NCBI RefSeq assembly: GCF_964204645.1
Contig: NC_134036.1
Span: forward strand, 9,341,859 to 9,405,858
DNA length: 64,000 bases
Direction: 5' to 3'
Source of the DNA: Tubulanus polymorphus
Taxonomy: Eukaryota > Animalia > Nemertea
Shown here: positions 30,473-55,215 of the stretch, one piece after another
How the letters are laid out: the number at the start of each line of letters is the position of its first letter
Position numbering within the stretch: the first letter of the stretch is position 1
Translations under genes and position numbers: made by a program
The notes under the pieces: model-generated
What the model was told of the DNA's origin: nothing
Database searches by the model: none
What the model saw: the letters and a program-made list of their open reading frames with translations, nothing else

Positions 30473-30575
<103 letters not shown>

Positions 30576-32324: not shown

Positions 32325-35300
32325 TTATTTCGTTTTCTGCTTCTTCGAGATAATATTATGTAGCCTCGTTCGAACCTGAGGCAAAGTTCGGCTACCACCA
32401 AGTTCTTCAACTACTTTTCTCAAGTCTACTGCTGGTGCCATTCGCTTATTATTCAAATAGTTATGCAATATCTTACAAAAAATATCTGTTTCTCCCTTTG
32501 TCCAGGGTGCCCTCTTAATACGTGACTTCTCATCTGAAACAAAATCATATAAAAATGCTACACAAACCATTGCATCAAGACTACTGATAGGTTCTCACAA
32601 TAGGCCCCATTTCCCCTAGGATTGTTATACCGTCCATAAGGTGGTTTAATCACTATGGACCCTATCCATGAACTTACTTTGCGCTTCAGATTGGTTAGTT
32701 TCCATCTTTGGCGGAACTTCTGCATCGACCATGTCATTGTCATCACTGTCATCACTGTTTTCACTGTCTTCACACTCAGTCCACTTATCGGCATAATCCA
32801 AGGATAATGGGAGTGCTAAAACGTTATCAATGAATAAATGCACATGTACACATACACACACACGGGTGACTGCTGTCATAGCAGAGAATACTAAAATATT
32901 TAATCTATCAGTAAAGTCAGACTTACCATCGGGATCAATATCCTCCAATGACTTTCCTTTGAATCTTGCCATAATGCCATTTTCGGCAGCCAATAGCGCC
33001 TTCGCTACCTTCGCTTTTTCAACGAGTGAAGATTGGAGGCAATATACATCTGCGTGAATTTTCACATCGTGCCCCATATGATCAGCCACCATCTTCAACT
33101 CGTTGGGCTTCATAGACAAAATCTGAAGTTATAAACCCAAATACTGGCTTTAGGGCTTTCATCAATTTCAAATCACTTCACAATATAATTTCCATTCACA
33201 AGTATCATTATAGCCGATCATTGATTTATTATAATCATTGCTTGTTATGTCTTTCGAAGACCAGAGCTTTACCTTCTTTATAGATATTCTTGATGAATGA
33301 AGGTTCTATTTTATATTCTTAAAAATTTCATTCACTAATACATACAGGGCTGGAAATTAGGCTTGTATGATAGTACATGTAAAAGCACTTCATGATAAGG
33401 TATGTCCTGATACGGATGTTTTAGGCCTATACAGGATCCGATATCAGCACTTGTCTATTATCACTTGTCATCCTTTTATGATAGGTTTTATATACTGGTT
33501 AACTGAATGTAGAATTGTGGGACATACATAAATAGGAAAAATCACTTCATGGTCAGGTAGTGTCTTGATATGATGGGTTTTATATGTCACTTAACTGGAT
33601 GTAGAATTGTGGGACATACATAAATAGACACTTCATAAATAGGTAGTGTTCTGATATGATGGGTTTAATATGCTATTTTACTGCATGTAGAATTGTAGGA
33701 TATATATATAATGGGAAAATCCTTTCATGATCAAGTACTGTCTAGATGATTACATGACCTTAACGGTCACATGCCCTCTAAATTTCAGTAAGTAATTAAC
33801 CTAATGATTCTTTTGAATATAGATAACACCTGATATCAGGAAGACAGAAAAAAATCCCCCATATACATGTAGTCTTAAATTGTCAGGTTATTAATCAGGT
33901 AATATAAATATACAACATTTATAATTGTAATACTGTGGTTTGTATTTTAAAGAGGTTTGTAATGCTTGCAATAAGACTAATCCTAGTTCATTGGTAAATG
34001 ATAAACCTACTTGTAGTGTAGTTGCAAAGAAAGATCGGAGCTTCGTCGATCTAATTCGTTCAGGTGCATTCAGTCCGGGACACAATTTTGTCATTTCACG
34101 CATTGCAGTACAACCGTCAAGTGGTGTGTCAGCACGTTTCCTAAAATGAATGATGGATTTGCAATGCTTGCACAAAACCTGTCACGATATGAACTAAAAA
34201 AGGTTCAGATTGTATTGCTTTGTAAAGTATATACTGTATACAAAGACATTTTTCTAAAAAATGGCTGCATGGCCTGGTAAGCACTAACTTATTTGATTAT
34301 TCAGCATGTAGATGCCCACGAACAAAACTATATCAGTTGTGATGAGAGATTAAGATTTTTATCAGGACTATTAATCAATTGACATTCAAAAAGGGAATGA
34401 TTGTACCTTAATAATAATAAAATAAACCTTGCATTAATCGAATCCATTCAAGAAACATTCAAAATCCGTATTGCAATTGTTAATGGGTTAATGTTATTTG
34501 AATAGGAAAGTGCAAACACTGTATAAATCAGAAAATAGCATTCTTCCTAGAAAGACCCACATAGCTTTATCTGTGAAACTTTACACTGACATTTCAGATA
34601 GACTTCTATCCATCTTCAGAGTTATATAAAAACTCTTCTAAATCGCTGAAGATGGATAGAAGTAAAATCTATCCAAATTGTCAATGTCAACAGATATACG
34701 TTGTTGAATGTTCTTATTATACACGCTATATACACGTCTTTTATACACGTCTTTTATACATGCTAAATAGAATGCCACAAGTCTAATTGATTTCAGAATT
34801 GATGTTACCTAGCAAAAATGAAGTCACTTGTACTTTGTCTGGTATCGAGGATATGTTCGATAGCTTTAACCATCTTCTCAGTAAGCAGAATGTATACACC
34901 TCGAATACTGCGAGTGCTCTTCCCTCGGATTTCTATTACACGCATTCTACAAAAAACTCTCCAAAATCAACCCAACATATCTTGTAAATTAGATAAGAGC
35001 ATATGACTAAGACAATTTTAAAACAACAATTACCGTTTGACCAAAAGCTGCTCAGCTAGAGACAGTGATTGCAGGATCTCTTGATTCTGATCGGCATCCG
35101 GCACAATATTTTCGAAATCGCTCATGATCATTTCTTCCACTTCTGATATCCGCCTTCGGTTGAAAAGGACTATACGGACAAGAACAGCATAAGCAAGATG
35201 TTTCCACTGTTTTGAAGTAGGCTCATGTATCATCAACGCTTTATCAATTTCAGAGTCGAGCCAATCTTTAAAGACTACTAAGTCATCTGCCACTGGATGT

Positions 35301-36121
35301 GTATTGCCTTGATTGAGTTTCCTAAGTTTAATCCTTCGATTAGCAACACACGAAACAGTATTGTTCCAATGGGCCCGATAAACTACTTCGAAATCTCTTC
35401 CCTCTTCTTGCATAATTTTGTCTCCTTCAAAAATCCCCATGCTCATTTTGAGGACAATGCAATGTTTGATGTAAATCCCCAAATTTATTGCCACACTCGG
35501 GGAATCTTTTTCCAAAGCTAACTTCTTAACACATTTGACTATCTGATGGAAATGTGGCCCTCTCAGGTACGAGGAAAGCGATATCCAGTTTTCTTCGCCA
35601 TTGTTCTCGTTCAGGGCTTTCAGTAGCATACCGAGTAAACGGACCTTTGTTCTCAAGTTTGCTAGGTCTTTTCGGCGCTGCTCCTTTGCAGTGCCTAAAC
35701 GCGAGTACAATGACAAAGCAAATTCACCAATTAATTCGTCTTTTTCGCAAATGCCAGGAATGCCAGGGTTTGCAACTGTTTCTCGCATTCTGCTGAATAT
35801 CAAGTTTAATGCAACCGTATCCTCATCGATTCTTGGTACAAATGGTGATAGCATGTTTCGAGAGGTTCTTATGTAATTGATGTCTGGTTGTTTTGCCATT
35901 GGTTTGAAGTGGCAACGTGTCGCATGCTCGGAAAGGCATCCCTTGTAGAAAAAACCCTTACAAAATTCGCATGGTACGTAGTCCACTGCATTTGGTGGTT
36001 TATCCGTTTTATTGGGTCTACGGACAACGACCAACGTACCATGTCCTTCTTTTATCACTTTACAATTGTGCCGAAAGTTTCCTTCATTCTGAAGTAAGCG
36101 CATATGTTTTTTTTTTTTCAT
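32325..36121 (-). CDS. Tyrosine recombinase and C-terminal Myb/SANT-like domain of element B
   Basis: LFNRRRISEV, IRGKSTR, RSTKLRSF, DHMGHDVKIHADVY (R-K-xxxR-H-Y catalytic set intact); RAPWTKGE..RTLPQVRTRLHN. Confidence 0.92.
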
Positions 36122-39100
36122 TTGGATCGCGTATCAGATGGTACTTTATAATTTCTGGTTCAGACGCGTGAATACTGCACAAATGCGAGGATATTTTCGA
36201 AGTAAACACACGCTTACAATACAAACAATAATCTGCCTTTCGGTAGTCCCGCTTGCCATCTACTGACTGGTATGTCGGAACAGTAACATGTTTCAAATGA
36301 GCCGACAGTCTTGACAGATAATCTCCAAAGTCTTCTTCCTCAATATCGTTATCATTTGGATCAATTTCATGGAGATTATCATCATCACTATCACATAGAT
36401 CGTCATCAGGAATGTAATCATCTTCAGAATCTGATATACATTTTCTTTTTTTCCGCTTTTTTGGAATGTCAACATCAATTGACTGATCTTCAGAGTCAGA
36501 TGAGTCAATTTGCCTTTTTTTCTTTATAATTGCATCCTGTTGTGAAGAGGTTCCAGCTTTCGGTTCAAATACATCTTTTGGCAGTAAAGGGGCAAAATGA
36601 TCCGGATTCCAGTGTCCAGGTTTAAGTTCTGAATGTGTAGTCCACATTACGAGTAAAGGTGCTTGCCTCAATGTGCCAGTCAAATTTTTTCTTGGATTTA
36701 ATATATGGTTCATTATAGGCACACGATTATCCAATAACCCATTAACCGAGGGGTATACTGATCTTATCCTCCTATCAATAACTGTTGCGAGTGCCTGTAT
36801 TGTCAGCATCGAAGAATAACTGTTGTGTATTGCACAAGCAATACATGCATCTGCGAAGGATGGTGAAATCAAATCGAATCCAAATTCGATACTTCGAGTT
36901 TGATAGAAGTCAGAATTCTCAACCATTTCGATACAAGTGCGAACACGAAGTTCAGTTGCTAGATCTTCACACCCACAAAGACCGACTGATACTGCATTGA
37001 ACAAACAGTTACCATCACCAGATACATCTGCAGGCATGAGCACCCCATTTACCATATCACCACATTTCTGCATAATTTCTAATGACCTGCCATGTACCAT
37101 CAGTTTTCTGTCCAAACACTTATACTCAAGTTCCCGTATCCTACTTGCAAAATAGCCAACAGTAGTTTTCAGATTCTCATAGCTTTTCTGTGCACTCAGA
37201 GTGAGCATCTTCAGAATGTTTGAGTAATCAATAGTGGTAGTAGCTGAAGATAAAATAAAAGACATCTATCAAGTGTTAATGAATACCTAGGAAACTACCA
37301 CCAAAACTTAACATGTTTGGTGTTGCAGATCTATTCTTATGAATTTAAATCAAATCTGGTAGACCTAGCCATTTTACATGTACCCAATTCAATACAATCA
37401 AAAGTCAATTTTCCGGCTTCTCAATAAAAATCTTGTCAAAGTTGTATCTAAATCCAATATCTAAAAAACAAATATCCTACTGAACTGAATTTTTGACTTT
37501 TTGACCTCGTAGAAACTGTTGAATTAATATTCACATACATTGATAACATCTTTGCGTTATTTCATGTTATTTTTGAAGGCATCATTGGACTACAAGTTTT
37601 TATCACTCTAACCTCTGTCTAACAATACTTCAATGTTCAATTCCTGCTGGTGCGAATACACAAACTATTTTCCATGAAAATCAATGAAATGACAGAAAAT
37701 TTCATGTGCTTTTTCACTTTGCAATAGATAATAGGTACAAAACTGAATGGTTCCAAAGTAAATTTCAAATTTCCAAAGTAAATTTCAATGTTCAAATTAA
37801 TCCTAGTGGGGAGAACAATATCGGATAATTTCTATTCAACAAAACAAATTCAACATAAATAACAACAACATAAATAACAAGTTAAAATTGTTGGTACCCT
37901 CCTTAAAAAAAAAACCATTCCAACCATGAGCGAGGACTGGTGAGACTAAGATGACTCAAAATTTGCCTGATCCAAACATATCTAAAGATCTAGAAATTGA
38001 GACTACAGATTACAGAGACTACTACAGAGACTACGCCATTTTCCTCTGATTGATCCAATTTTTCCAGTAGTAATAGGCTCTGGGCAGAGATACATATATT
38101 ATATATACCAAACATCAAACAAGTTCTCCATGAAAACTTTTGTTGAACAAATACTGTTGGTCACATATCTTGAATCTGATAAGACCAGTTTTTGAGCTGC
38201 AGTTGTCTCAAAAGTACTAGATACATGTATTAAGACAATCCTTTAAAATATCTCCAAAGCTTCCTAAAATGCTTTGATTCTACCTATGGATGGACAATTG
38301 ACACTAGAACGCAATATGCCTAATACAACTTTAGAACAAGATTTTTCAGTTAATGTGTAAGATTTTTCAGTTAATATGCACCTTTTTAAGGTAGATAAGA
38401 TCATAACGTTCACTTACCGCAGGTTCCCTCCTTGTTTTCATAAAAAAATGGTAATTCTTCATCGCTATCATAGTCATGTGGCAGAAAACCTAAATAGATT
38501 AGTTTCAATTATTTCAATTATCCATACTGGCATAATTTTTCGGCATTGACCCTCCCCCTTAGTATCTACGTGTTAATGACACAAGCTATGCTCAACACTT
38601 TCAACGACCGAAGGATATTTTTTATGAAATAGGGAGTGTAAAGTAATATGGATTGCAATTTATTTTTATATCACAGTTTTTGATGCATTTTAGGACATGT
38701 CTTGTCCACAAAGTATGTGCTCCTTGAAAGACAAAAGTTCGTACAATGTGCTCTAATCCCCACCCACAAAAGAAGGGAAACCACTTTTACATGATTTCAC
38801 TCTCTGAAGACCGATTGCATTTTGACTTTCTTCTCGCAAGGCATTATCTTGCAAGTCGATCGTTTTCCTTACACTCACAAAATATGAATGTTTAGGATGA
38901 ACAAAAACCAGGTTTAAAGGTATAGTACACTTCAAATGTAACGTACTTATTATAGCTTGAGATATCGAAGATTCAAGTAATTCCTCGCCATCTGAAAATT
39001 CTAAAAGTAGAGAAAAGCCAAAACATCTCAAAAACTATTTGAAGAAAATATATATTTCAATTATCAGTGGGTAAGTAGTGTTAGCTAGTCCAATTTTGGG

Positions 39101-42100
39101 AATAAAACAAATTCCAAAGATAACTATATTGGCAGCTCATTGATGTTCAATCATTCAAATAGCTGATTATTGGAAATGTGCATCTTGTGAATAATAAAGC
39201 TATGTAACTATCAGTAACTGCATAAATACGGTAGATATCATCGATACAGCTATTAAATTGTGAACAACTATAACTGCTTATGCAAACAAGTGTTATCTTA
39301 CCAGAACAGGTGGATTCAGAATCATTGTCAACATCACCAGAAGGGCCACATGTCAATGCATCATCTTGAAAAATAAATGATATGGTGACAATTATTGCTG
39401 CATGTTACAAGTTAAAGAATTATGCAATACGTTAATTTACCAGAGCAGGTAAATTCAGAAACTTTCTTTATATCATCACATCAATACATTATCTTGAAAA
39501 TCAAATGACAGATATAATGATACAGCAACCTGACAATTATTGCAACATAACATAAGTAAAGCATGCAATGGTGATATAATGTATTAGATTATAATGTAAC
39601 ATAGAATTGTGATGCATAAAATTGTTCAAATTCTTCATGAACAGGAAAGGTCTATTTCAACTTGTTTGAAAAGGATATTGGGTTTGGGATAGTGTCCTGA
39701 TATGGGATTTATATGCTGAATGTAGAATTGTAAGATATGCATAGGTAGTAAAATCACTTCATCATTAGGCAGTATCCAGATATTGTGGGTTTTATATGCC
39801 ACCTAACTGAATGTAGAATTGTAGGACATATATGAATAGTAAAATCACTTCATCATTAGAGAGTGTCCCAATATGAAGGGTTTTATATGCCACCTAACTG
39901 AATGTAGAATTGTAGGACATATATAGACAGTAAAATCACTTCACAATTAGGTAGTGACCAGATATGATGGGTTATATATACTACTTAACCAAGTACAGAA
40001 TTGTAGGACATACATAAATAGTAAAATTATTTAATGATTAGATAGTGTCCTGATGTGAATGGTTTTATATGCCACTTAAGTAAATGGAGAATTGTAGGAC
40101 ATATGGTGAATCTTTTCTCATTAAGGTAGGATAGGTTTTATATGCCCCTTTACTAAATATAGAACTTTTAACACATATGAATAGAGAAATAGAGTTTATT
40201 TACCAGAAACTGTGAATTCAGAAATTTTCTTTTCACCAGAACACTCACGAATCAATGAAATATCTGTAAAATAAAATGACAGATACAATGATACAGCAAC
40301 CTGTTGACCACTATAACTGCATTATACAAGCTAAAAAGTTACATAATGAGTAAACTTACCAGAACACGTGAATTCAGAAACTTGTTTTGAATCATCACTG
40401 GAACATTTACTCGTCAATACATTATCTAGAAAATCAAATGACGGATACAATGATACAGCAACCTGTTGACCACTATTACTGCATTATACAAGCTAAAAAG
40501 TTACATAATGAGTAAACTTACCAGAACACGTGAATTCAGAAACTTGTTTTGAATCATCACTGGAACATTTACTCGTCAATTCATTATCTAGAAAATCTAA
40601 TGACGGATACAATGATACAGCAACCTGATGACCACTTTTACTGCATTATTCAAGCTAAAACGTTACATAATGAGTAAACTTACCAGAACACGTGAATTCA
40701 GAAACTTGTTTTGAATCATCACTGGAACATTTACTCGTCAATACATTATCTAGAAAATCAAATGACGGATACAATGATACAGCAACCTGCTGACCACTAT
40801 TACTGCATTATACAAGCTAAAAAGTTACATAATGAGTAAACTTACCAGAACACGTGAATTCAGAAACTTGTTTTGAATCATCACTGGAACATTTACTCGT
40901 CAATACATTATCTAGAAAATCAAATGACGGATACAATGATACAGCAACCTGTTGACCACTATTACTGCATTATACAAGCTAAAAAGTTACATAATGAGTA
41001 AACTTACCAGAACACGTGAATTCAGAAACTTGTTTTGAATCATCACTGGAACATTTACTCGTCAATACATTATCTAGAAAATCAAATGACGGATACAATG
41101 ATACAGCAACCTGTTGACCACTATTACTGCATTATACAAGCTAAAAAGTTACATAATGAGTAAACTTACCAGAACACGTGAATTCAGAAACTTGTTTTGA
41201 ATCATCACTGGAACATTTACTCGTCAATTCATTATCTAGAAAATCTAATGACGGATACAATGATACAGCAACCTGATGACCACTTTTACTGCATTATTCA
41301 AGCTAAAACGTTACATAATGAGTAAACTTACCAGAACACGTGAATTCAGAAACTTGTTTTGAATCATCACTGGAACATTTACTCGTCAATACATTATCTA
41401 GAAAATCAAATGACGGATACAATGATACAGCAACCTGCTGACCACTATTACTGCATTATACAAGCTAAAAAGTTACATAATGAGTAAACTTACCAGAACA
41501 CGTGAATTCAGAAACTTGTTTTGAATCATCACTGGAACATTTACTCGTCAATACATTATCTAGAAAATCAAATGACGGATACAATGATACAGCAACCTGT
41601 TGACCACTATTACTGCATTATACAAGCTAAAAAGTTACATAATGAGTAAACTTACCAGAACACGTGAATTCAGAAACTTGTTTTGAATCATCACTGGAAC
41701 ATTTACTCGTCAATTCATTATCTAGAAAATCTAATGACGGATACAATGATACAGCAACCTGTTGACCACTTTTACTGCATTATTCAAGCTAAAACGTTAC
41801 ATAATGAGTAAACTTACCAGAACACGTGAATTCAGAAACTTGTTTTGAATCATCACTGGAACATTTACTCGTCAATACATTATCTAGAAAATCAAATGAC
41901 GGATACAATGATACAGCAACCTGCTGACAACTATTACTGCATTATACAAGCTAAAAAGTTACATAATGAGTAAACTTACCAGAACACGTGAATTCAGAAA
42001 CTTGTTTTGAATCATCACTGGAACATTTACTCGTCAATACATTATCTAGAAAATCAAATGACGGATACAATGATACAGCAACCTGCTGACCACTATTACT

Positions 42101-45100
42101 GCATTATACAAGCTAAAAAGTTACATAATGAGTAAACTTACCAGAACACGTGAATTCAGAAACTTGTTTTGAATCATCACTGGAACATTTACTCGTCAAT
42201 ACATTATCTAGAAAATCAAATGACGGATACAATGATACAGCAACCTGTTGACCACTATTACTGCATTATACAAGCTAAAACGTTACATAATGAGTAAACT
42301 TACCAGAACACGTGAATTCAGAAACTTGTTTTGAATCATCACTGGAACATTTACTCGTCAATACATTATCTAGAAAATCAAATGACGGATACAATGATAC
42401 AGCAACCTGTTGACCACTATTACTGCATTATACAAGCTAAAAAGTTACATAATGAGTAAACTTACCAGAACACGTGAATTCAGAAACTTGTTTTGAATCA
42501 TCACTGGAACATTTACTCGTCAATACATTATCTAGAAAATCAAATGACGGATACAATGATACAGCAACCTGTTGACCACTATTACTGCATTATACAAGCT
42601 AAAAAGTTACATAATGAGTAAACTTACCAGAACACGTGAATTCAGAAACTTGTTTTGAATCATCACTGGAACATTTACTCGTCAATACATTATCTAGAAA
42701 ATCAAATGACGGATACAATGATACAGCAACCTGTTGACCACTATTACTGCATTATACAAGCTAAAAATTTACATAATGAGTAAACTTACCAGAACACGTG
42801 AATTCAGAAACTTGTTTTGAATCATCACTGGAACATTTACTCGTCAATACATTATCTAGAAAATCAAATGACAGATACAATGATACAGCAATCTGCTGCC
42901 AATTATTACTGCATTATACAAGCTTAAGTTATTTCATGAGTTTACTTACCAGAACAAGAATCATGATTTTTTTTTTCACCAGATTTGTGTTGACGAAAAG
43001 ACTTGGAAGTCAATACATTATCTTGAAAATGAAATTACAGGGTGTTAATACAATACCTAGAGTAGGTAATTTCCCAAAATATAGGCTTACATGTTGCCAG
43101 TAGACCATCTTGAATGTGATCCATGAAAATTACATGGTTTTATATCAACCTCATTTTGAGTGTGTCAAGAGAAAGTAAAAAATCGACAAAACATGTATGC
43201 CTGGTTACTGTCTTTTTTCCAATCCTACCGTTCAATTTGTAGGGAAAGAAATCAAATTACCTGCCAAGGGTAGAAATAGGAAAATTGCAAGGCGGGTTCA
43301 AAAAGTAAATACGAGGCATTTTCGGTTAAAGCAGCCATATCAAATTCGTTAAGGAGGGTCCCTCCATCTAGGGTTAGATACACTTTTGAATAAATCAACC
43401 CTTAAAGATGAAATTTCTGAGATGTTAAATTTATAGGTTTAAGTTATCTCTGTACGAAGGGCAACTTCAAAGGGAAGGCACGAGTCTAGACCTTCGAGAC
43501 CACCCGCTTGATACGCCCCTGCATGCATTTCAAAGATCATGTTTACTTCATGAGAATGGATTATTTCTAACATAAATAATAACCAATTTCATTGATGTTA
43601 AAAATATATTTTTATCAAACGATACATACTTAGACCATCAGGAAATTATAGCACTGTATAGTATTCACCTTAAAACAAAACATTTATCATGGTGGGTGGC
43701 CAATAGGACTGAACCTAAGTTTTTTTACACAAAGAATACATGCTTAACATTGCTCATTATCTAAAATATGCATTATGAGATAATTCAATGAAACAAAAGG
43801 GAACCATAAAAATTGAAAAGCATACAACAGATATATATATATAGAATATATATAAGGTTAGAATATATATAAGGTTAGGCCTATCACATGCAAAATGATT
43901 CAAATTCGTCTATTTCTGCTGTTCTGGTGGACGGCTCAACAAAGTATACCGGTAAATGTATAAACTGAGTTTATGGACATACAAATCTTATAGAGAAAAA
44001 GAGCAACATTTCTGAGGGGTGGATGCAAGCTGGATTTATATGTGCATAATAAAAGGCATAATTCAACTACCCGCCCTTGGTTGTGTTCCAACCTAATGCT
44101 TCTAAGCCAATACTGTATCATTCACTTATACAAATTGGGTAATGATAGTTTATGGTCGTTGGTGTATCAAAATGAATCATCTACCATCATAGGGCATACC
44201 TATAAGAAGCAAGTTGCATCTAACATAACCTATCTTATCTTCAAAGTCCAATGATATTTATTAACCGCAGAATTAACACATATTCCTGATAGACACCCTC
44301 AATTCAGATTCATGCACAGTTATCACACACAGTACATGAAGAAAATCTCATGGCGCAAATGTAGCCTGTATACAGCAAGTTTTTATGTAAGCCATGAAAT
44401 GCAAGGCAAATCTGAAATTTACATTTGAATATGATAGACTCATTTTGCTTTTATTCTCCATGCTTAAACCAAATTCCATCTACATAGGCCTAATGACAAT
44501 CGCAAGCTTCAGCATGCTGGGTGTACTTTGCAAGTTTGACTAAATCTAGAAAATTTTAATCCCAACAGGTTAACAAGCTTACCTGAGGCATTAAGTTCTT
44601 TTTTGTTAGAAGCCTATTTATATGTTGAATACAAAAATAATTTTCCAGAATGGCATAATGGAAGCAGTGAAGAAATCAGCAAATAAGCAAATGTAGCTCA
44701 TTCATGCAGCACAGAAATACAATATGGTACCCAAATGCATCAGTAGAAACAAAGATACTACACGGCGTATCTATAGTACAATGATTAGTTGTAGAGGAAC
44801 TTTTATCGTGATTAAGAAATTGATCAGTCGATGTTCTTAGGATCAGTACATACACACAGAGAAGGGTGAGGGGGTTTGAAAATTTGTATTAAAATGTCTA
44901 TGGTTGTGTATGAGAGGGGGTTTGCATTTATAAACTGCTGTATGCACCATACTCCATGTAGTATGATCATTGATGTTGGACCATCGTAACTCATAACCAA
45001 AGTTTAATTTTTTCAACACCAGCATAAATCATTTACTGATAATTCATTAATAAAGACAAGCGTTACGAATCATAAACTGCTTTCTTCTCGGGACCCGCTG

Positions 45101-48100
45101 TCAAGGATAATTGGAGATATTGAGGTTATGTTCACGATACTTTTTTTTCAATTGACAACTTCAGTCGTCATTCTGATAAAAATTACAAGCTTTGAACTTA
45201 GGGCTAATTCTTTGATGCACAAATGCTTGCATTAGAGGTTGTTACTATAAGGCACTAAAGCGTATACAAAAAGTATGGATGTATGGTGAAGGGGAGGGTA
45301 AGGTTCTAACTGAATGAGAGCTTCGCTGCAACAAAATTGGATGAAAATAAATCATCATAATTTACCTGTCTCCACCAATAATCAGTCACCCCGTAATCAT
45401 ACCGCAATTCTGTTTTGGGGGGTATGTCCTTAATAGCAAAAAATGCAATATGGGGCCTTCCTTCAGATATGACGGTTTTGGCTTTACAGTTTTCTTTGCC
45501 ACCCCACCCATCATTGATGAGCCGTCCCAAACTACCATCATCAATTGAGGCATCAATGCTGAAATGGTAAAAGTCATATTTAGAGTATTCAATTAGGCCT
45601 AATATACTTTAAGAAGATGGGTGGTATCAAATTATGATACAGGCCTACAGGTAACAGTTAGGCTTTGAATGACTTATTTTAGTTAAAGTGTAAACTAAGT
45701 AGCCTGATGGGCAATATCTGGTTAGAAAATCAATAGACCTACATACCACAGAGAACTGAACTTTTTGTCTTGAAATTCAAAGACATATGTATCGTCATCC
45801 CCGATTTCCTTCACATCACGGAGTAGCCCACGATATTCCACCAAAAAATCCCCTCTACAAACTGCTTTCTTTGTGAATAATCCATATCCTTAATCAGAAA
45901 AAAGTATTATCTTTGATTAAAAACCATTCCTTCAGGTCCTACATTAAAACCTAGGGTCCAGGGACACCATGCCCAGATGAGAAAAGGTTTGAAATGCTCA
46001 ACCATCTGGAAATGTTAATATTCAACGTCTGGTGAACTACAGAAACCATGACATAAATTTTGCATTGATTGTTTATTTATGTCTTTACTATGTATTGTGG
46101 TAACAAAATATGCCAATGTATTAATAGGTATGATATGGAAATACTCAGTTTCTGCTATTAAGTCAAGGAAGCTACCGATATAGGTTTTTGAGGATTTCAG
46201 ACTGAGATTTTTGAGCTATATGGGCACCAAAAAGGTCACAGGACGGACTTCTTGTGTCTGATCAACTCAATTGTTTTAATGCTGATGGGCCCCTGGGCAT
46301 TAAAAATATTATTTGAAAGATCAAGATAATTGAAGCGTCTTAAAAGATTTCCCTTGAAAACATCAAAATCTGTAAAAATGCTGATTTCGGCAAACAGAAA
46401 TCTGCCATCTTGATTCTGACAGGACCAGTCTTTGGGCTGTAGGTGTTTCAGGGTAATATATGTATAAACCAAACATCAATCCATGTGTTTTCTAAACTTC
46501 CCAAAATAACTGGATTCTGTCTACGGACTGACACAACAGATATTCTATAAAAAAGTGGATATCATACAGATGCAGCAGTAATTTAGTAAACTAGTGGTCC
46601 AGGGACACCACGCCCACTTGGGAAGTGGTTAGAAATGCTTAACAAACGGAATATTCAACGCCCCCTGGTGAACATATTAAGAAAGCAATGACCTTACAAC
46701 TCACCACAATCAATGATGGAACATGTCATGAGCTACAATTTTGTAATTGATTGTGGTTACAAAATATCCTTAGAGACCAATACAATATGAAAATACTAAT
46801 ATAATATAATAAAAGTTATTTAGCTCTTCAATGCCCCTGGTGGCCTAGGGCCGATTCTTTTATGCAGTACGGATAATCCGGACGCTCCATTTCCATTCTT
46901 TTATTGATCAGGTGACTATTTCTGGAGAGTTCGGAGAGTCCATTCTCTCCAATCTGTCGACCGGTGTGATTGCGGAGAGACCACGTGACAAAATGGCGAC
47001 GCATGAATTTTGCCTCCTAAAACTCAGAAAAGTTACGGAAGCCGCCATTTTGATTCTCAACAACTATTCCATTATGCACAAATCAGGATATTCAATCCGG
47101 AGAATACGGACTGCATAAAAGAATCGGCCCCATAATCATAGAATATGTCACAAGATACAATTTTGCCATTCATTGTGGTTACCATACCAATGACCTTGAA
47201 ACTCATACAAAATATCAATAGGTACCAATTCTGTAATTCTGTATGTAATTCTATATTCAACTCTCCCTGGTGGTGAGAACAAAAACCCGGGTAACCCCAA
47301 TTCCACGTGAGGAGATGAATACTATGACAGCGATACTATAGGCCTATATCAAATATCAAGACTATAAGTCAAAACTTGTCCATAGTTTCCTTCAAAAACC
47401 TTTTTCTGAGGACTGATGACACGAAGATGGTCACTGATTGCATCACGCTTGACTGATCAAAGTATCTGTCTGATAGGCCTGTGTAAGAGCCCTTCTCATA
47501 GTATAACCAGATCTCGGAATTCAGGCCAAAAATGACCTTGGGCATAAAAAAGGTCACATGATGGCCATGTTAAGTCTGATCTACACAATTTTTCTTATGC
47601 TGATGCACCGGGGATACAAACAGATGTGAATGATCAAGATAATTGATCAAAGGGTTTCAAAATTTCCCTTAATAACATCAAAAATATGTAAAAAGTGCTG
47701 ATTTTGCTGAACAACAATGGCAACCAGTCGGCCATCTTGATTCTGATCAGGCCAGTTTTCGGGCAGAAGATGTATCTAGATACATGTAAAAACTAAAGAT
47801 CAAGACAATCCATTGAAGCGACTTCAAAACTTCCCAAAAGAACTTGATTCCGTCTATGGACAAACGGACGACAGATGAAAAGTGAACGCAATAGTCCACT
47901 GGGACTTAAGTCCCAAGTGGGCTAAAGATTATGTTGTCCTCATTATATATCAAAAACACTTCTCGGCCTATAGGCCTCATTAGGTTTAGGATAGGGTTGG
48001 GGTCTAGAAGGTCAGGAGGGTTAGGGTTTGATAGGGTTAAAACATTCCATTTAGGTATAATTTAGCCTACCTATTTCGCTATTGACAACTTTTTTTTCGA

Positions 48101-48173
48101 ATGCCTCTTCTGGATCTTTGCCAAATTTAATAAATTCAAGAGCCACCTGACTTGGTGTCATGCGTCTCGGCAT
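32325..48173 (-). CDS. Predicted ~1620-aa SET, repeat array, OTU (vertnin-like), C2H2, tyrosine recombinase, Myb-like fusion protein. Exons: 48173-48071, 45888-45747, 45558-45366, 44613-44583, 43021-42950, sixteen 66-nt exons (42855-42790 down to 40425-40360), 40263-40204, 39364-39302, 38991-38947, 38489-38418, 37243-35034, 34946-34809, 34140-34011, 33122-32927, 32815-32678, 32533-32325
   Basis: All junctions are GT-AG with compatible phases. The summed length (4857 nt) is a multiple of 3 after removing one base from the T12 run at 36107-36118. Domain motifs are listed in the sub-features. Joining the SET exons to the YR exons in one transcript is inferred. Confidence 0.72.
33380..33745 (-). 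repeat. Diverged inverted copies of the 91-bp satellite unit in a YR intron
   Basis: ACTGAATGTAGAATTGTGGGACATACATAAATAG..AATCACTTCAT is the reverse complement of the 50.4-53.5 kb unit. Confidence 0.8.
36620..37060 (-). CDS. OTU-like cysteine protease domain (vertnin-like) within the element B gene
   Basis: VSGDGNCLFNAVS (catalytic Cys), ELRVRTCIEM, IQALATVIDRRIRSVYP, WNPDHFAPLL (catalytic His). Confidence 0.88.
39690..40185 (-). repeat. About 5 inverted copies of the 91-bp satellite unit in an intron next to the exon array
   Basis: Repeated TTTTATATGCCACCTAACTGAATGTAGAATTGTAGGACATATAT..GTAAAATCACTTCA. Confidence 0.85.
40351..42940 (-). repeat. 162-bp tandem array, 16 near-identical units; each unit is a 66-nt phase-1 exon plus a 96-nt intron
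   Basis: TAAACTTACC recurs every 162 bp from 40351 to 42781. The minus strand reads TTTTCTAG|66 nt|GTAAGT, encoding DNVLTSKCSSDDSKQVSEFTCS. Confidence 0.93.
45366..48173 (-). CDS. SET domain (KMT5A/PR-Set7-like) exons of element B
   Basis: MPRRMTPSQVAL..IG|YGLFTKKAVCRGDFLVEYRG..YVFEF..CIDAS..LGRLINDG..NC..PHIAFFAIKDI..ELRYDYG..WW. Confidence 0.9.
45950..47925 (-). mobile_element. Two inverted, diverged HINE copies (~45950-46530 and ~46590-47925) in the first SET intron
   Basis: Reverse complements of the 21244 element: CTAGGGTCCAGGGACACCATGCCCA (45951), CTAGTGGTCCAGGGACACCACGCCCA (46591), GTCCCAAGTGGGCTAAA (47910-47926). Confidence 0.7.
46848..47130. mobile_element. MITE (PIF/Harbinger-like) nested in a HINE
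   Basis: TIRs GGGCCGATTCTTTTATGCAGT / ACTGCATAAAAGAATCGGCCC. Confidence 0.7.
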
Positions 48174-49366
48174 CTCACCTGAAAAATACAACCAAGAATA
48201 AGGTGCTATGATAATGGGCAGGCTTATTTGTATCTTTGCCCTATTAACCGAGATATTAATACTGCAAATTGGGCAGAACACAAATCCTCACCTTGAAACA
48301 TAAAAAAAATAAAAAAGAATTAAGCGATTGATTTTTGCAAAAAAAAAACCATTTAGACCAACGGCCACGTCACTGCATATCATATCAATAGCAGTAGCAC
48401 TTGATATAAATTACAAAAATTGGCTGTCAAAAATATACAATAAAGAAAAAATTCATTGTGCAACACCGGTGCTTAGTTCCAAGCTTCAAGGCCTAAATAT
48501 GCTAGAATTCTGTATCTACTACTAGGGGGCCTAAATAAGTGAAACTAATTAGTAAGCAGGCATGGCTATAGGCCGGTCCATGTCCTACAATGAACCTGTA
48601 ACAATGACAGGTTGGTACCGGTATTTGGATTATAATCTAGGCTGATTCAGCAGGTTAGCTGTAGCCTACTGTGCAGTGGTAAAAGTATCAGCCTGTAGCG
48701 CGGAATATCAGTCAGCACATCAGGTTTGGTTTCTATGATGATCGGACTGTTTTACAAACCACGACAATTCCTATACCGGTAGGTATTTGTAGGCCTATTT
48801 GTATATACTCTAGGGCCTCTCTAAGTTCTGGATATTATCAACGTTAGCAGTAAAAGTACAAATTACAAGCCTATCTGAGATGACTCGGTCAAGACTAGAG
48901 ATAGGGCCTAATACTACTAGTAAGGTCAGATGTAGTCTAGTACCTAGCCGTTGTTTTCCAAACAGGTTGTAGGTAGGGAACCGTAACAACAACTGTTGAA
49001 CAGCAGTTGTTACAGTCTGTTCAGACTAGTACTAGGTCAGATGGTATTCAGGCCATCAGGGATTAGCTGGGAGGAGGCCTTTATTTTATTAGATAATAGC
49101 TTACCACCAACCGATTACTAAATACTAACAAGGACAGGTTACTCACATCCAATGTGCTAGTGCTGGTGTACTATAGGCCTATAAGTATAGTTGAATGTGT
49201 GTGTAAATGAATTTAGCGTTTTCTGCAATCCTGATTAGAAATGCGGTACAATGTATGTCAATATAAGAAATTTTGTAGCCAGAATTTTAATGAAACGGGC
49301 GTAAATGTAGTAATGAAAATATTGCACGTCCACCGGTTGTTTACAACGCAGCAACGACCTTCAACG

Positions 49367-49425
49367 TAGTCTGAATACCGGTCGTTGTTACCGGTTCCCT
49401 AGAACGACGGCTAGGTACTAGACTA
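49367..49425. mobile_element. 59-bp TAGTCT...AGACTA mini-element with a 9-bp TSD; related inverted copy at 48933-49028
   Basis: CCTTCAACG|TAGTCTGAATAC...GTACTAGACTA|CCTTCAACG. Confidence 0.65.
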
Positions 49426-50389
49426 CCTTCAACGCAGCAACGAACTAACCGGTAGCCCTAAATACCGAACAAAACCGTTAAATACCGACTTTATGTCACT
49501 AATCAATTTTAGATGCGGGCATAAGGCTAATTTATTTTCGTGTGAAATCGATCTTTTTGGGATATTTCGCTTAACTTTTTGAACACATACCCTAAATTGG
49601 TCTTAACGACCAGTGTACGGTAACTGTGCAGCCTGAATAAATCCTCGTTTTATAGCCATTTTAGACTGTATTGAATTATTGCCAAAGGGTTTTCATTTTC
49701 TCGTGTCGAAAACAGAAAAGATCAGCCATTTTTTGAAATTCTAAGATGTTTCTTGTGTTTCCGTGCCTACGAACCATGATTTTCTTTGAATAATTTGCAA
49801 ACATTTTCAAATGGCAAGGGCCTAGGCATAGAAAAATATTGTTAAAATTGATTTACGTAACGGTAGTTCATTAAATGGGGTCTATTTTCTCTAATTGAAA
49901 TGAGTTAAAGAAGACTTTTTTTTAGTAATCCTCCAATGCAAAACAGTTTAAAATGGATAAAACGATGATTTACTTACAGTTTCACTGGTCGTATTAAGAC
50001 CTAATTGAGGTACCCGGTATGTGTTGAAAAGTTTAGTTTATAGGGAACTCAAAAAATCGATGTCAGACCAAAAAAAAATTAGAATTTAGGAACGGACATG
50101 CAGATATGTCAGGCATACACTGCTAGTCTATTCACTTTTGTGTTTCATCAGTTTTCTCGAGATAATTTGTAACTTTTGTGAGCAAATACTTCAAACTAAT
50201 GCCATTCAAGCCAGAACTGTGCAGTCGGACATCGTTTTTGTATCCATCTTAAACACTGTATTGAAGGATTGTTAAAAAGTCTTCTTAAACTTATTTATGA
50301 CAGAGAAAAGAGACTTCACGAATCGCACCGGTTCTTGAAAGATCATAATTACATCAGGGCAATATCTAATCTTGCATTGATTGTACTAG

Positions 50390-53300
50390 TCATGTCCTAC
50401 AATTCTACATTCAGTTATGTGGCATATAAAACCCATCATATCTGGACACTACCTAATCATAAAATGATTTTACTATTTATGTCTATTACTACATATGTCC
50501 TACAATTCTATATATACAATTCTATATCGCTGGCATATAAAACCCTTCATATTGGCACATTTCGTAATGATGAAGTGATTTTACTATTTTTATATGTCCT
50601 ACAAATCTATAATTAGTTAGGCAGCATAGAAAACTCGACTCGTAAGAAACTACCTACGGTAATCATAAAGCATTTTACTATTTATATATGTCTTACAATA
50701 CTGCATCAGCTAAGTGCAGTACAAATTTATATTCAGTTAGGTGGCATATAAAACTATCATATCAGGGCGCTATTTGTGGATGTCTTACAATTCTACATTC
50801 AGTTGCGTGGCATATAAACCCACGGCATCAGGACACTGCCTGATAATTTTACTATTCGTATATTTCCTACAAATCTACATACATTTTAAGTGGCGTATAA
50901 AACCATTCATATTAGGACAATGGACACTCTCTAATTATGAAGTGATTTTACTATTTATATATGTCCTACAATTCTACCTTCAGTTAAGTGGCATATAAAA
51001 CCCTTTATATTGGGACACTCTCTAATGATGAAGTGATTTTACTATTTATATATGTCCTACAATTCTACCTTCAGTTAAGTGGAATATAAAACCCTTTATA
51101 TTGGGACACTCTCTAATGATGAAGTGATTTTACTATTTATATATGTCCTACAATTCTACCTTCAGTTAAGTGGAATATAAAACCCTTTATATTGGGACAC
51201 TCTCTAATTATGAAGTGATTTTACTATTCATATATGTCCTACAATTCTACATTCAGTTAAGTGGCATATAAAACCCTTTATATTGGGACACTCTCTAATG
51301 ATGAAGTGATTTTACTATTTATATATGTCCTACAATTCTACATTCAGTTAAGTGGAATATAAAACCCTTTATATTGGGACACTCTCTAATGATGAAGTGA
51401 TTTTACTATTTATATATGTCCTACAATTCTACCTTCAGTTAAGTGGCATATAAAGCCCTTTATATTGGGACACTCTCTAATGATGAAGTGATTTTACTAT
51501 TTATATATGTCCTACAATTCTACCTTCAGTTAAGTGGAATATAAAACCCTTTATATTGGGACACTCTCTAATGATGAAGTGATTTTACTATTTATATATG
51601 TCCTACAATTCTACCTTCAGTTAAGTGGAATATAAAACCCTTTATATTGGGACACTCTAATTATGAAGTGATTTTACTATTTATGTATGCCCTACAATTC
51701 TTTAATCAGTTTCGCAACATATAGAACTCATCATCAAATTTATATTCATTTAGGGGGTATTTAAAACTATTCATGTCAGGACACTACCGAATCCTGAAAT
51801 GATTTTACTATTTGTGTAGGTCCTACAATTGTACATGATCAGTTGCGTGGCATATAAAACCTACGGCATCAGGACACTGCCTAATGATTTTACTATTCGT
51901 ACATGTCCTACAAATCTACATACATTTTAAGTGGCGTATAAAACCATCCATATTAGGACAATGGATAATCATGCCATTATTTTACTATTTGATTATGTCC
52001 TGCAATTCTACATCCAATTAAGTGGCACATATATCGGGACACTGCCTAATCGTGAAGTGATTTCACTATTTATATATGTCTTACAATTCTACATCCAGTT
52101 AAATGTCATATGAAAAAAATCGTTCATACCTATTGGGACACTCTCTAATTATGAAGTGATTTTACTATTCGTATATGTCCTACAATTCTACATACATTTA
52201 AGTTGCGTATAAAACCATTAGTGTCAGGACACTAGATAATCATGGCGTTATTTCACTATTTAAATATGCCCTGCAATTCTACATTCAAGTAAGTGGCATA
52301 TAAAAACATTAAAATCCGGACACTACCCAATCATGCAGTAATATTATTTATCAAAAATCCATAGGAGCAAAAACAATACAAATCTCATTTTCTAATGAGT
52401 AATATATATTTATTATAGTAAACGTTTTCGGGAGTTACATTATCCCCTCTTCAGGCATAGCGCGCAAGTGATTAAATTTTCATATAATACGTTTTTAGAT
52501 AATTAACTACTAGTCAAATATATTCACTCAGTAATTTAGATTGTGTATAATTAATTATCTTTATATTGTAATCATCTTGTCACTCAGTTAATTGAAATTG
52601 TTTGTAATTAGCTTCGTCCTATTCTATATAAATACCAGTATGATATGAACATTTAATCACTTGCGCGCTATGCCTGAAGAGGGGATAATGTTACTCCGGA
52701 AAACGTTCGCTACAATAAATATATATTACTCATTACAAAATGCGATTTGTATGGTTTTTGCTCCTATGGATTTTTAATTATCTTGACCCTCTACCTAAGA
52801 ACTAATATTATTTATATATGTCCTGTAATTCTACATTACGCTGCGTGGCATACAAAAGCATATCAGGACACTGCCTAATCATGAAATGATTTTACTATTC
52901 ATATATGTCCTACAAATTTACATACATTTAAGTGGCGTATAAAAACCCTTCGTATCAGCCCACTAGATAATCGCGACGTTATTTTACTATTCATTATGTC
53001 CCGCAATTCTACATTCAGTAAAGTGGCATATAAAACCCACCATATCTGGACACTCCCTAATGATGAAGTGATTTTACTATTTATATATGTCCTACAATTC
53101 TACATGCAGTAAAATAGCATATAAAACCCATCATATCACACACTACCTAATTATGAAGTGATTTTACTAATTGTATCTACACATCTACATTCAGTTTATT
53201 GGCATATAAAACTATTCATATCTGGACACTACCTAATCATAGAGTTATTATAATATTCATATTACACACTACCTAATTATGAAGTGATTTTACTAATTGT

Positions 53301-53470
53301 ATCTACACATCTACATTCAGTTTATTGGCATATAAAACTATTCATATCTGGACACTACCTAGTCACAGAGTTATTATAATATTCATGTCCCCCAATTATG
53401 CATTCATTTAAGTGGCATATAAAATCAATTATATCAAGACACTACGTAATCATGACGTGATTTTACTACA
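50390..53470 (+). repeat. 91-bp satellite array inside element B; homogeneous core ~50920-51700 with diverged flanks
   Basis: TGGGACACTCTCTAATGATGAAGTGATTTTACTATTTATATATGTCCTACAATTCTACCTTCAGTTAAGTGG.ATATAAAACCCTTTATAT recurs at 51011, 51102, 51193 and onward. Confidence 0.93.
52352..52802 (+). mobile_element. Penelope-like inverted-repeat insertion with hammerhead-ribozyme core and 13-bp TSD
   Basis: Arms 52353-52484 and 52643-52775; CTGAAGA GGGG..CTCC GGAAAAC at 52674-52704; TAATATTATTTAT at 52339-52351 and 52803-52815. Confidence 0.7.

Positions 53471-55132: not shown

Positions 55133-55133
<1 letters not shown>

Positions 55134-55215
<82 letters not shown>
55134..55215. repeat. (TA)41 microsatellite at the 5' end of element B
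   Basis: Directly visible. Confidence 0.98.

What the first reader, a model, noticed from the sequence alone, without database searches (positions are those of the whole stretch)
39302..43021. A satellite that is really an amplified exon-intron cassette: sixteen or more symmetric 22-codon exons inside a transposon gene
Seen: each 162-bp unit has TTTTCTAG|exon|GTAAGT on the gene strand. The exon is 66 nt, phase 1-1 and stop-free (DNVLTSKCSSDDSKQVSEFTCS). Older diverged homologues keep frame at 72, 60 and 63 nt (43021-42950, 40263-40204, 39364-39302), which suggests selection; one 52-nt copy (39492-39441) is dead. A V>E variant recurs at 40581, 41229 and 41715, showing multi-unit duplications. 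Inference: a length-tunable Ser/Cys/acidic linker (~350 aa) between SET and OTU/YR, adjustable by unequal crossover or exon skipping.
Basis: partly seen in the sequence, partly recalled or inferred. Interest (0 to 1): 0.82.

Follow-up and report, generated by a model that had tools for sequence, protein, structure and literature searches.

The report
Amplified exon-intron cassette in a transposon gene

Summary
Window 40360-42855 (minus strand) carries 16 units of 162 bp. Each unit is ttttctag|66 nt|gtaagt plus a 96-nt intron. The exon is open in one frame only (DNVLTSKCSSDDSKQVSEFTCS), phase 1-1. Diverged homologues of 72, 60 and 63 nt keep frame and splice sites; a 52-nt copy is dead.

The array lies in a 24.7-kb tyrosine-recombinase (Crypton-like) element of Tubulanus polymorphus. 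The element has five 99.6%-identical copies carrying 16, 12, 12, 12 and 11 units, so the length is unstable.

RefSeq models splice the last 3-5 units in frame into the OTU/recombinase protein. Their start codons are contrived, and I had no RNA data.

A 50%-diverged paralogous element has its own 434-bp cassette x3 at the same place. Its 153-nt phase 1-1 exon is far better conserved than its intron. This is the best evidence that such cassettes are real exons.

"Linker between SET and OTU" is not supported. The SET exon ends in phase 0, and splicing it onto an array exon reads IMY-stop. That is exactly the C-terminus of RefSeq's 149-aa KMT5A-like protein.

Most likely the array is a variable N-terminal repeat of the OTU-recombinase protein, started from a small exon at 43124-43091.

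The scan has noted two other exon-intron-like arrays in this genome, called non-coding.

The parts
30475..55206 (-). The whole mobile element (about 24.7 kb), bounded by (TA)n tracts. Genes run on the minus strand.
   Evidence: 99.59% identity to the C7 copy over exactly this span, with unrelated flanks. Five copies exist in the genome.
45366..45558 (-). Third SET-domain exon (KMT5A-like). It ends ...WWRQ with a phase-0 donor, gt at 45365-45364.
   Evidence: Pfam SET E = 3.6e-8. Matches RefSeq XP_074653171.1 residues IDAS...WWRQ. The paralog has its donor at the same place.
43091..43124 (-). Candidate first coding exon of the repeat-OTU-YR protein (ATG..., 34 nt, MDHIQDGLLAT plus 1 base, donor gtaagc). 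A 69-nt intron separates it from the 72-nt exon. Inferred only.
   Evidence: It is the only ATG-started segment with a strong phase-1 donor between SET and the array. Downstream of the array there is only one weak alternative.
42950..43021 (-). U0, an old diverged cassette exon of 72 nt, phase 1-1 (DNVLTSKSFRQHKSGEKKNHDSCS). Read in phase 0 it gives IMY-stop.
40360..42855 (-). Core array of 16 cassette exons: 15 complete 162-bp units (66-nt exon plus 96-nt intron) followed by the 16th exon, whose own 96-nt intron (40359-40264) lies just outside this span. Exons start at 42855, 42693, ... 40425.
40204..40263 (-). U17, an old diverged cassette exon of 60 nt, phase 1-1 (DISLIRECSGEKKISEFTVS).
   Evidence: Included in all RefSeq models. 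Splice sites shown.
39716..40104 (.). 91-bp satellite (4.3 copies) lying in the 711-nt intron between U17 and U18.
39441..39492 (-). U18, a 52-nt cassette copy. It keeps ag/gtaaat but has stops in the array frame and shifts the frame. RefSeq models skip it.
39302..39364 (-). U19, an old diverged cassette exon of 63 nt, phase 1-1 (DDALTCGPSGDVDNDSESTCS).
38947..39000 (-). 54-nt phase 1-1 exon (EFSDGEELLESSISQAII) of the RefSeq models.
38418..38489 (-). 72-nt phase 1-1 acidic exon (FLPHDYDSDEELPFFYENKEGT). The paralog has a similar exon at the same place.
35033..37243 (-). Large exon with the OTU protease domain and the zinc-finger/N-terminal recombinase part, entered in phase 1. In this copy it is split into 393 + 363 aa by a one-base length difference in an A-run near 36105-36116.
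   Evidence: Pfam OTU. The ORF is 744 aa and open in the other four copies. A12 here versus A11 there.

Best explanation
The 162-bp satellite is a recent tandem amplification of one exon-plus-intron cassette. It arose by unequal recombination or replication slippage between units. The cassette belongs to an older run of short, symmetric phase 1-1 exons: U0, core, U17, U18 (dead), U19, and then two unrelated acidic exons. This run forms the 5' part of the OTU-protease/tyrosine-recombinase gene of a 24.7-kb Crypton-like DNA transposon of Tubulanus polymorphus. Every exon in the run, and the acceptor of the OTU exon, is phase 1, so any number of units can be spliced in or skipped without breaking the frame. 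Shown: the anatomy, the gene context, and unit gain and loss between element copies. Inferred: the units are spliced and translated as a Ser/Asp/Cys-rich, probably disordered N-terminal repeat of 22 aa per unit. Also inferred: translation starts in a small exon at 43124-43091. The SET (KMT5A-like) reading frame upstream is a separate product. Its last donor is phase 0, so when spliced onto a cassette exon it stops after three codons. The two products may share downstream exons through alternative 5' modules.
For: Anatomy and chance. The introns of 96 nt and the signals gtaagt and ttttctag resemble the other introns of the same gene (84-147 nt). RefSeq (Gnomon) models of all five copies splice 3-5 core exons, then U17, U19 and two more phase-1 exons, in frame into the OTU/YR ORF, and skip the dead U18. 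The 'IMY-stop' end of RefSeq KMT5A-like XP_074653171.1 can only come from an array-type acceptor: all 15 sites in the element downstream of the SET donor (window 45363-30475) that could encode it are array-type exons. The paralogous element L027 (OTU 49-51% identical) has the same layout: SET with a phase-0 donor, then a 434-bp cassette x3 with a 153-nt phase 1-1 exon, then an acidic phase-1 exon, then the OTU exon entered in phase 1. Its cassette exons are 96-97% identical with no indel, while its introns are 79-87% identical with 22-34 gapped columns (Fisher p = 5e-6, 5e-8 and 3e-3). A clam homologue (Tegillarca KUTeg_002150) also has an N-terminal protein repeat encoded by duplicated exons. 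Unit counts and unit-type strings differ between copies that are otherwise 99.6% identical.
Against: I had no RNA or peptide data. The RefSeq models include only 3-5 of the 11-16 units. They obtain their start codons by contrivances: a 5-nt ATGCA first exon, or a 5-nt ATAAT micro-exon. Their 5' parts therefore look ab initio. The array frame has no ATG anywhere. On a SET-to-U0 spliced RNA it opens just after a stop, and its first AUG is in the OTU exon. The proposed start exon rests on one ATG in a weak context. The core units are too young to show selection. Between the old copies the exons are not clearly better conserved than the 3' intron ends. No processed retrocopy carrying an exon-exon junction exists in the genome. 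The scan reports other splice-signal-bearing but non-coding arrays in this genome.
Confidence: 0.5

Rival explanations
1. The cassette exons are spliced into RNA but not translated. They form a long multi-exon 3' untranslated tail of the SET message, or a 5' leader of the OTU/YR message whose translation starts at the first AUG in the OTU exon (MLTLSAQK...). The open frame is a relic of the exon from which the unit arose.
For: The SET frame stops 3 codons into the first cassette exon, and RefSeq ends its KMT5A-like protein there. The array frame has no ATG and is closed 5 codons upstream of the SET junction. RefSeq had to invent start exons. Relatives of the OTU domain carry only about 45-190 aa before it. 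The scan has noted other spliced-looking non-coding arrays in the same genome (unchecked).
Against: About 140 codons stay open across non-identical exons (U0, core, U17, U19 and two unrelated exons), all in the phase needed by the OTU exon. The paralog's cassette exons have no indels and are much better conserved than their introns. A SET message with some 20 exon junctions after its stop should be degraded by nonsense-mediated decay (general knowledge).
Confidence: 0.2
2. The array is an intronic satellite. One exon with its flanks was duplicated and then amplified neutrally. The spliceosome jumps over the whole array, or all of it apart from the old copies U17 and U19, so the core units never reach mature RNA.
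For: The core units are 97-100% identical and too young for selection to have acted. The unit length of 162 bp is typical of ordinary satellites (my own knowledge). RefSeq includes only the last few units. Other satellites (91 bp) also sit in introns of this element.
Against: Sixteen perfect gtaagt donors and pyrimidine-rich ag acceptors at short-intron spacing are hard for the splicing machinery to ignore (inference). The array was carried through a transposition burst in all five copies. The same kind of cassette amplification is found independently in the paralog, with exon-specific conservation.
Confidence: 0.2
3. One reading: one polypeptide, SET then a roughly 350-aa tunable linker then OTU then recombinase.
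For: SET, the array and OTU/YR lie in the same order and on the same strand in this element and in its closest paralog. Both SET domains end at a conserved splice donor rather than at an obvious terminal exon.
Against: There is a phase mismatch (0 versus 1) in both paralogs, and a direct splice gives a stop. No strong exon converts phase 0 to phase 1 in the 2.3-kb gap. RefSeq annotates SET as a separate 149-aa protein. No database protein of 312-2126 aa joins them. The long SET relatives carry MYM zinc fingers, not OTU or YR.
Confidence: 0.07

Closest known systems
Coding exon-intron copy-number repeats such as the kringle IV-2 repeat of human LPA (from my own knowledge, not tested here)
   Same: A head-to-tail repeat whose unit holds complete exon(s) plus intron. 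The exons are frame-neutral, so unit number changes protein length. Copy number varies by unequal recombination.
   Different: The LPA unit is 5.5 kb with two exons encoding a folded kringle, in a host gene, with expression proven. Here the unit is 162 bp with one 22-codon low-complexity exon, inside a transposon. It varies between transposon copies rather than between alleles, and expression is unproven.
Runs of short symmetric exons encoding disordered repeats, for example titin PEVK exons or collagen 54-bp exons; tandem exon duplication in general (from my own knowledge; tools for cataloguing it exist, e.g. Exonize, PMC12343006, seen but not read)
   Same: There is one short repeat per exon, all of the same phase, so exons can be added or skipped freely. 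The product is an extended, low-complexity segment.
   Different: Those arrays are old, with diverged introns. Here exon and intron are homogenised together at 97-100% identity, so the array also registers as a satellite.
Crypton DNA transposons (tyrosine recombinase elements); some carry a cysteine protease next to the recombinase, e.g. CryptonF-2_PS with a C48/Ulp1 peptidase (PMC3212892)
   Same: The gene has a tyrosine-recombinase domain and introns, and a cysteine-protease domain in the same protein. There are several near-identical copies at different loci.
   Different: The protease here is OTU, not C48. The element is very large (24.7 kb), carries a SET gene and internal satellites, and sits in (TA)n tracts. 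No exon-cassette array is described in that paper. Membership of a named Crypton group was not tested.
Ordinary non-coding satellite DNA
   Same: A tandem, homogenised monomer of 162 bp with a higher-order pattern of unit variants.
   Different: Each monomer has a perfect acceptor, one open frame of 3n length and a perfect donor. It is homologous to neighbouring exons of an annotated gene. It occurs only inside the five element copies.

Membership tests
Exon-intron cassette repeat (tandem exon amplification) | The repeat unit contains a complete exon with acceptor and donor plus a complete intron. | tested here: met
   16 units of ttttctag|66 nt|gtaagt plus a 96-nt intron.
Exon-intron cassette repeat (tandem exon amplification) | Exon length is a multiple of 3 with the same phase at both ends, and is open in that frame. 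| tested here: met
   66 nt, phase 1-1, and only one frame open. The old copies are 72, 60 and 63 nt.
Exon-intron cassette repeat (tandem exon amplification) | The units are actually spliced into mature mRNA. | not testable with these tools
   No RNA data were available. RefSeq models include 3-5 units, but their 5' ends are contrived. No retrocopy with a junction exists.
Exon-intron cassette repeat (tandem exon amplification) | Copy number changes by whole units. | tested here: met
   16/12/12/12/11 units in the five element copies, with matching unit-type strings apart from +4 and -1 units.
Exon-intron cassette repeat (tandem exon amplification) | The exon part is under more constraint than the intron part. 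| tested here: inconclusive
   Core array: 1/66 against 12/96 variable sites, p = 0.016, or 0.14 without the edge unit. This is clear only in the paralog's own cassette (p down to 5e-8).
Crypton-type tyrosine-recombinase transposon | Encodes a tyrosine recombinase domain. | tested here: met
   Pfam Phage_integrase PF00589, E = 6.8e-7, above the cut-off, in RefSeq model P0014. The catalytic residues were not inspected.
Crypton-type tyrosine-recombinase transposon | Multiple copies with defined ends at unrelated loci. | tested here: met
   Five copies on five contigs. The window and C7 copies, compared over their whole length, are 99.6% identical, and the homology stops at (TA)n on both sides.
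Crypton-type tyrosine-recombinase transposon | No reverse transcriptase (which would make it DIRS/Ngaro) and no long terminal repeats. | not tested
Single SET-OTU-YR fusion protein | An open reading frame continuous from the SET domain into the repeat. | tested here: not met
   Phase 0 donor against phase 1 exons. A direct splice gives IMY-stop. The array frame is closed 5 codons before the junction. No strong bridging exon was found.
Non-coding satellite DNA | No gene structure in the monomer. | tested here: not met
   Splice signals, an open frame, homology to annotated exons, and restriction to the element.

The most novel reading that the evidence does not exclude
One transcription unit makes two proteins by choice of 5' module. 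Either the three SET exons (phase-0 donor) or a tiny ATG exon at 43124-43091 (phase-1 donor) is spliced onto the same run of symmetric cassette exons. The second reads through a copy-number-variable 22-aa repeat into the OTU protease and recombinase. Each copy of the transposon in one genome would then encode a transposase with an N-terminal repeat of different length (11-16 units), and exon skipping would add isoforms.
Probability: 0.25. Interest if true: 0.65.

Novelty: new member of a known kind. Interest (0 to 1): 0.45.

Why it matters
If the units are spliced and translated, this is a clean, very young example of how a coding repeat is born. Exon and intron are amplified together as a satellite, the phase symmetry makes every unit frame-neutral, and length changes are visible between transposon copies only 0.4% diverged. 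It would also show that a eukaryotic DNA transposon can carry a rapidly length-variable segment in its own transposase. The same tendency appears in a paralog and in a clam relative, which hints at a property of this element lineage. For annotation, it warns that such arrays mislead gene predictors: here they produced five different truncated models with invented start exons. If the units are not translated, it is an ordinary intronic or UTR satellite derived from an exon.

Tried and rejected
(1) I searched the protein collection with the repeat-bearing N-terminus of the RefSeq models, in two length ranges (668-2126 aa; 312-992 aa). Only the models' own cluster came back, so there is no longer isoform and no relative with this repeat.
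(2) I looked up the window's own RefSeq model on its contig. Records of this genome are withheld, so no gene coordinates were obtained.
(3) I searched the genome for a processed retrocopy carrying the exon-exon junction. There was none. This is uninformative.
(4) tblastn of the repeat and linker exons against 11 diverged paralog loci and tblastx of the element against the paralog detected only SET and OTU. The linker exons are too short or too diverged.
(5) I enumerated bridging exons (phase 0 to 1) and ATG start exons in this element and in the paralog. There is one good start candidate here, none in the paralog, and no strong bridge.
(6) Pfam scans of long SET relatives and of OTU relatives found no SET-OTU-YR architecture.
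(7) Rfam and tRNA scans of the window found nothing.
(8) A literature search found no genome paper for this species and no description of this element.
(9) I rejected programmed frameshifting between the SET frame and the array frame, because there is no slippery site at the junction. This was judged from the sequence (inference).
Exons were handled one at a time by reference, and the only spliced proteins used were database entries.
Full report
WHAT IS THERE. Tandem Repeats Finder reports one array at 40261-42956 with period 162, 16.7 copies, 97% matches and score 5091. Read on the minus strand, the region holds 16 core units. Each unit consists of the acceptor ttttctag, a 66-nt segment, the donor gtaagt and a 96-nt intron-like remainder. 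Thirteen of the 66-nt segments are identical. Three carry one T>A change (Val to Glu), in the exons starting at 40587, 41235 and 41721.

Only one frame of the 66 nt is open, and it reads DNVLTSKCSSDDSKQVSEFTCS with one base borrowed from the preceding exon (phase 1-1). The other two frames stop within four codons. No frame on either strand of the core array runs more than 50 codons, so the peptide can only arise by splicing.

Flanking the core are diverged homologues of the whole cassette:
- U0 at 43021-42950 (72 nt).
- U17 at 40263-40204 (60 nt).
- U19 at 39364-39302 (63 nt).
- U18 at 39492-39441 (52 nt).

U0, U17 and U19 are all open in phase 1-1 with ag/gt kept. U18 keeps its splice signals but has stops in that frame and would shift it.

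CONTEXT. The genome is Tubulanus polymorphus, a ribbon worm, according to the source names of the matching RefSeq proteins. The array lies inside a 24.7-kb element spanning window 30475-55206. This element is 99.59% identical to a copy on another contig over exactly that span, and both ends lie in (TA)n tracts with unrelated flanks.

Five copies exist, on contigs C12 (the window), C7, C6, C2 and C1. The minus strand carries, in order:
- SET-domain exons (48173-48069, about 45887-45749, and 45558-45366).
- The array.
- Two short acidic exons.
- A large exon with an OTU cysteine-protease domain.
- Exons with a tyrosine-recombinase (Phage_integrase) domain and a Myb-like tail.

I call the element Crypton-like. 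A recombinase next to a cysteine protease is known in some Cryptons (PMC3212892), but I did not test subgroup membership or the absence of reverse transcriptase. I only saw that both ends of two copies lie in (TA)n.

LENGTH INSTABILITY. The five copies carry 16, 12, 11, 12 and 12 core units (C12, C7, C6, C2 and C1). Typing each unit by its variants gives these strings:
- ABBCDEFGDHGBDHGI for the window copy.
- ABBCDDFGDHGJ for C7, C2 and C1.
- ABBCDDBDHGJ for C6.

The 12-unit array was therefore already in the common ancestor of the burst. The window copy has since gained four units (BDHG) and C6 has lost one. This happened while the rest of the element diverged by only 0.4%. This supports "adjustable by unequal crossover". 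All scored genomic matches to the unit lie in these five loci.

ARE THE UNITS EXONS? Four lines of evidence point that way.

(a) The signals are canonical, and the 96-nt intron matches other introns of the same gene, which are 84, 111 and 147 nt with gtaag-type donors.

(b) RefSeq (Gnomon) models for all five copies are XP_074652770, XP_074654519, XP_074662711, XP_074661107 and XP_074643935. They contain 3-5 copies of the 22-aa peptide, followed by the U17 and U19 peptides and two further short exons (39000-38947 and 38489-38418), joined in frame to the OTU exon at 37243. They skip U18. All these exons, and the OTU acceptor, are phase 1.

(c) The closest diverged relative in the genome is L027 (C2:9609000-9618900), whose OTU domain is 49-51% identical. 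It has the same layout: a SET exon ending at a phase-0 donor at the homologous codon, then a tandem repeat of 434-442 bp x3, then an acidic phase-1 exon, then the OTU exon entered at the homologous codon in phase 1. Each 434-bp unit contains tttctag|153 nt|gtaatt, open only in phase 1-1 (ENVTATSAALIEKPSEKQDF...). One of the three copies has a weakened donor. The three exons differ at 4-6 of 153 positions with no indel. The 284 nt upstream of each differ at 35-55 positions plus 22-34 gapped columns (Fisher p = 5e-6, 5e-8 and 3e-3). So an independent cassette amplification exists at the same place in a sister element, with clear exon-specific constraint.

(d) A clam homologue, Tegillarca granosa KUTeg_002150, is 42% identical over the recombinase half. 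It has an N-terminal protein repeat encoded by alternating duplicated exons of about 190-200 nt. This is an ab initio model, so it is weak evidence.

LIMITS OF THAT EVIDENCE. I had no RNA data. The RefSeq models begin inside the array and manufacture a start codon. In four models the start is a 5-nt first exon, ATGCA|gtaata, joined to an acceptor inside the next unit's intron. In the C6 model it is an ATG in the tail of U0 plus a 5-nt ATAAT micro-exon. This is what a predictor does when a frame is open upstream but has no ATG, so the 5' parts of these models are not evidence of real splicing.

The core units are too young to test selection. Variable sites are 1 of 66 in the exon and 12 of 96 in the intron (p = 0.016). 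That falls to p = 0.14 when the edge unit is left out, and the sites are not independent events. Among the old copies, four of five length changes are multiples of three (p = 0.045). The exons are not clearly better conserved than the last 40 nt of their introns. There is no processed retrocopy carrying an exon-exon junction. The scan has also noted two other tandem arrays with splice signals but no reading frame in this genome (s1-509269 and s1-518590; unchecked by me). This cautions against reading splice-like arrays here as coding by default.

RELATION TO SET. The last SET exon ends ...WWRQ, with the donor gt at 45365-45364 in phase 0. The cassette exons are open only in phase 1. Read in phase 0, U0 and the core exon both give IMY-stop.

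A full HMMER search with the SET exon found RefSeq XP_074653171.1, "N-lysine methyltransferase KMT5A-like", 149 aa, from the C6 copy. Its sequence is the three SET exons followed by exactly IMY. Within the element downstream of the SET donor, the only ag-preceded sites that can encode IMY-stop are U0, the 13 Val-type core exons and U18. So RefSeq splices SET straight onto a cassette acceptor and the protein ends there. A three-codon terminal exon 2.3 kb away is an unlikely ab initio choice, so I infer that this junction has read support. I could not verify this.

Further points against a single polypeptide:
- Read in the array frame, SET exon 3 has a stop five codons before the junction.
- No exon with a strong donor converts phase 0 to phase 1 in the 2.3-kb gap, either here or in the paralog.
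- No database protein of 312-2126 aa joins SET with the repeat.
- The long proteins among the SET relatives carry MYM-type zinc fingers, not OTU or recombinase.
- OTU relatives fused to other transposases carry no SET.

WHERE COULD THE REPEAT FRAME START? The array frame contains no ATG in U0, the core, U17, U19 or the two acidic exons. The first in-frame Met is in the OTU exon. Between SET and the array, the only ATG-started segment ending at a strong donor in phase 1 is 43124-43091 (MDHIQDGLLAT plus 1 base, donor gtaagc), 69 nt upstream of U0. Downstream of the array there is only one weak candidate, and it would skip the acidic exon shared with the paralog.

My working model is therefore two products with alternative 5' modules feeding the same run of symmetric exons. 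The SET exons in phase 0 give a stop and a 149-aa protein. The small ATG exon in phase 1 gives the repeat-OTU-recombinase protein, which would carry about 350 aa of repeat in this copy. This model is inference.

MECHANISM AND FUNCTION. The following are shown:
- A cassette of exon plus intron was amplified in tandem.
- Units are gained and lost in blocks.
- Symmetric phase 1-1 throughout makes any unit count frame-neutral.

It is inferred that the product is a Ser-rich (6 of 22), acidic (net charge -2 per unit), two-Cys low-complexity N-terminal repeat. It has no Pfam match and is probably disordered. I have no evidence for a particular role. Neutral expansion of a tolerated segment is as likely as a tuned function.

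VERDICT. My estimates are:
- Splice-competent, translated cassette exons of the OTU/recombinase gene: 0.5.
- Spliced but untranslated: 0.2.
- Purely intronic satellite: 0.2.
- A SET-linker-OTU single polypeptide: 0.07.

This is another example of tandem exon amplification, a known kind, in an unusual host: a transposon's own gene, varying between element copies.

SCOPE NOTES. The window copy itself differs from the other four by one base in an A-run, which splits its 744-aa OTU ORF. This may be a real defect or a homopolymer error. Nothing in the window looked human. The Polinton-like region at the window start, noted by others, was not touched.

Noticed in passing
window 48173-48069, about 45887-45749, 45558-45366 (minus): A KMT5A/SET8-like SET-domain gene is carried inside the transposon. 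RefSeq XP_074653171.1 (149 aa, C6 copy) ends with IMY-stop, read from a cassette exon in another frame.
   Followed up: yes
window 36105-36116: This copy has A12 where the four other copies have A11. This splits the 744-aa OTU/recombinase ORF into 393 + 363 aa. It is either a real defect of this copy or a homopolymer sequencing error.
   Followed up: partly
window 33446-33713, 39716-40104, 50831-53468: A 91-bp satellite occurs at three places in the element: twice in introns of the OTU/YR gene and once as a long array in inverted orientation (86% complementary arms 10.9 kb apart). All scored genomic matches lie in the five element copies.
   Followed up: partly
window 39441-39492: The 52-nt cassette copy keeps ag and gtaaat but has stops in the array frame and shifts it. 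If used, it would act as a poison exon.
   Followed up: partly
L027:2360-3563 and L027:1364-1948 (G000:C2:9609000-9618900): A paralogous element lies 20 kb from the C2 copy. It has its own 434-bp exon-intron cassette x3 (153-nt phase 1-1 exon; the middle copy has a weakened donor) and a 34-bp x17 minisatellite in the next intron.
   Followed up: yes
L038:22101-26277 (Tegillarca granosa CM056597.1): The clam homologue KUTeg_002150 has an N-terminal protein repeat of about 127 aa encoded by alternating duplicated exons of about 190-200 nt. It lacks a detectable OTU domain.
   Followed up: partly
window 30590-30610 and 55102-55120: A short inverted motif (TTAACGGGG.GTTTGT) lies just inside the (TA)n tracts at both ends of the element.
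   Followed up: no
L029:8356-8766 and L030:8340-8768: Two more distant OTU paralogs share a 209-bp x2 repeat a few hundred bases upstream of their OTU exon. I did not examine it for exon structure.
   Followed up: no
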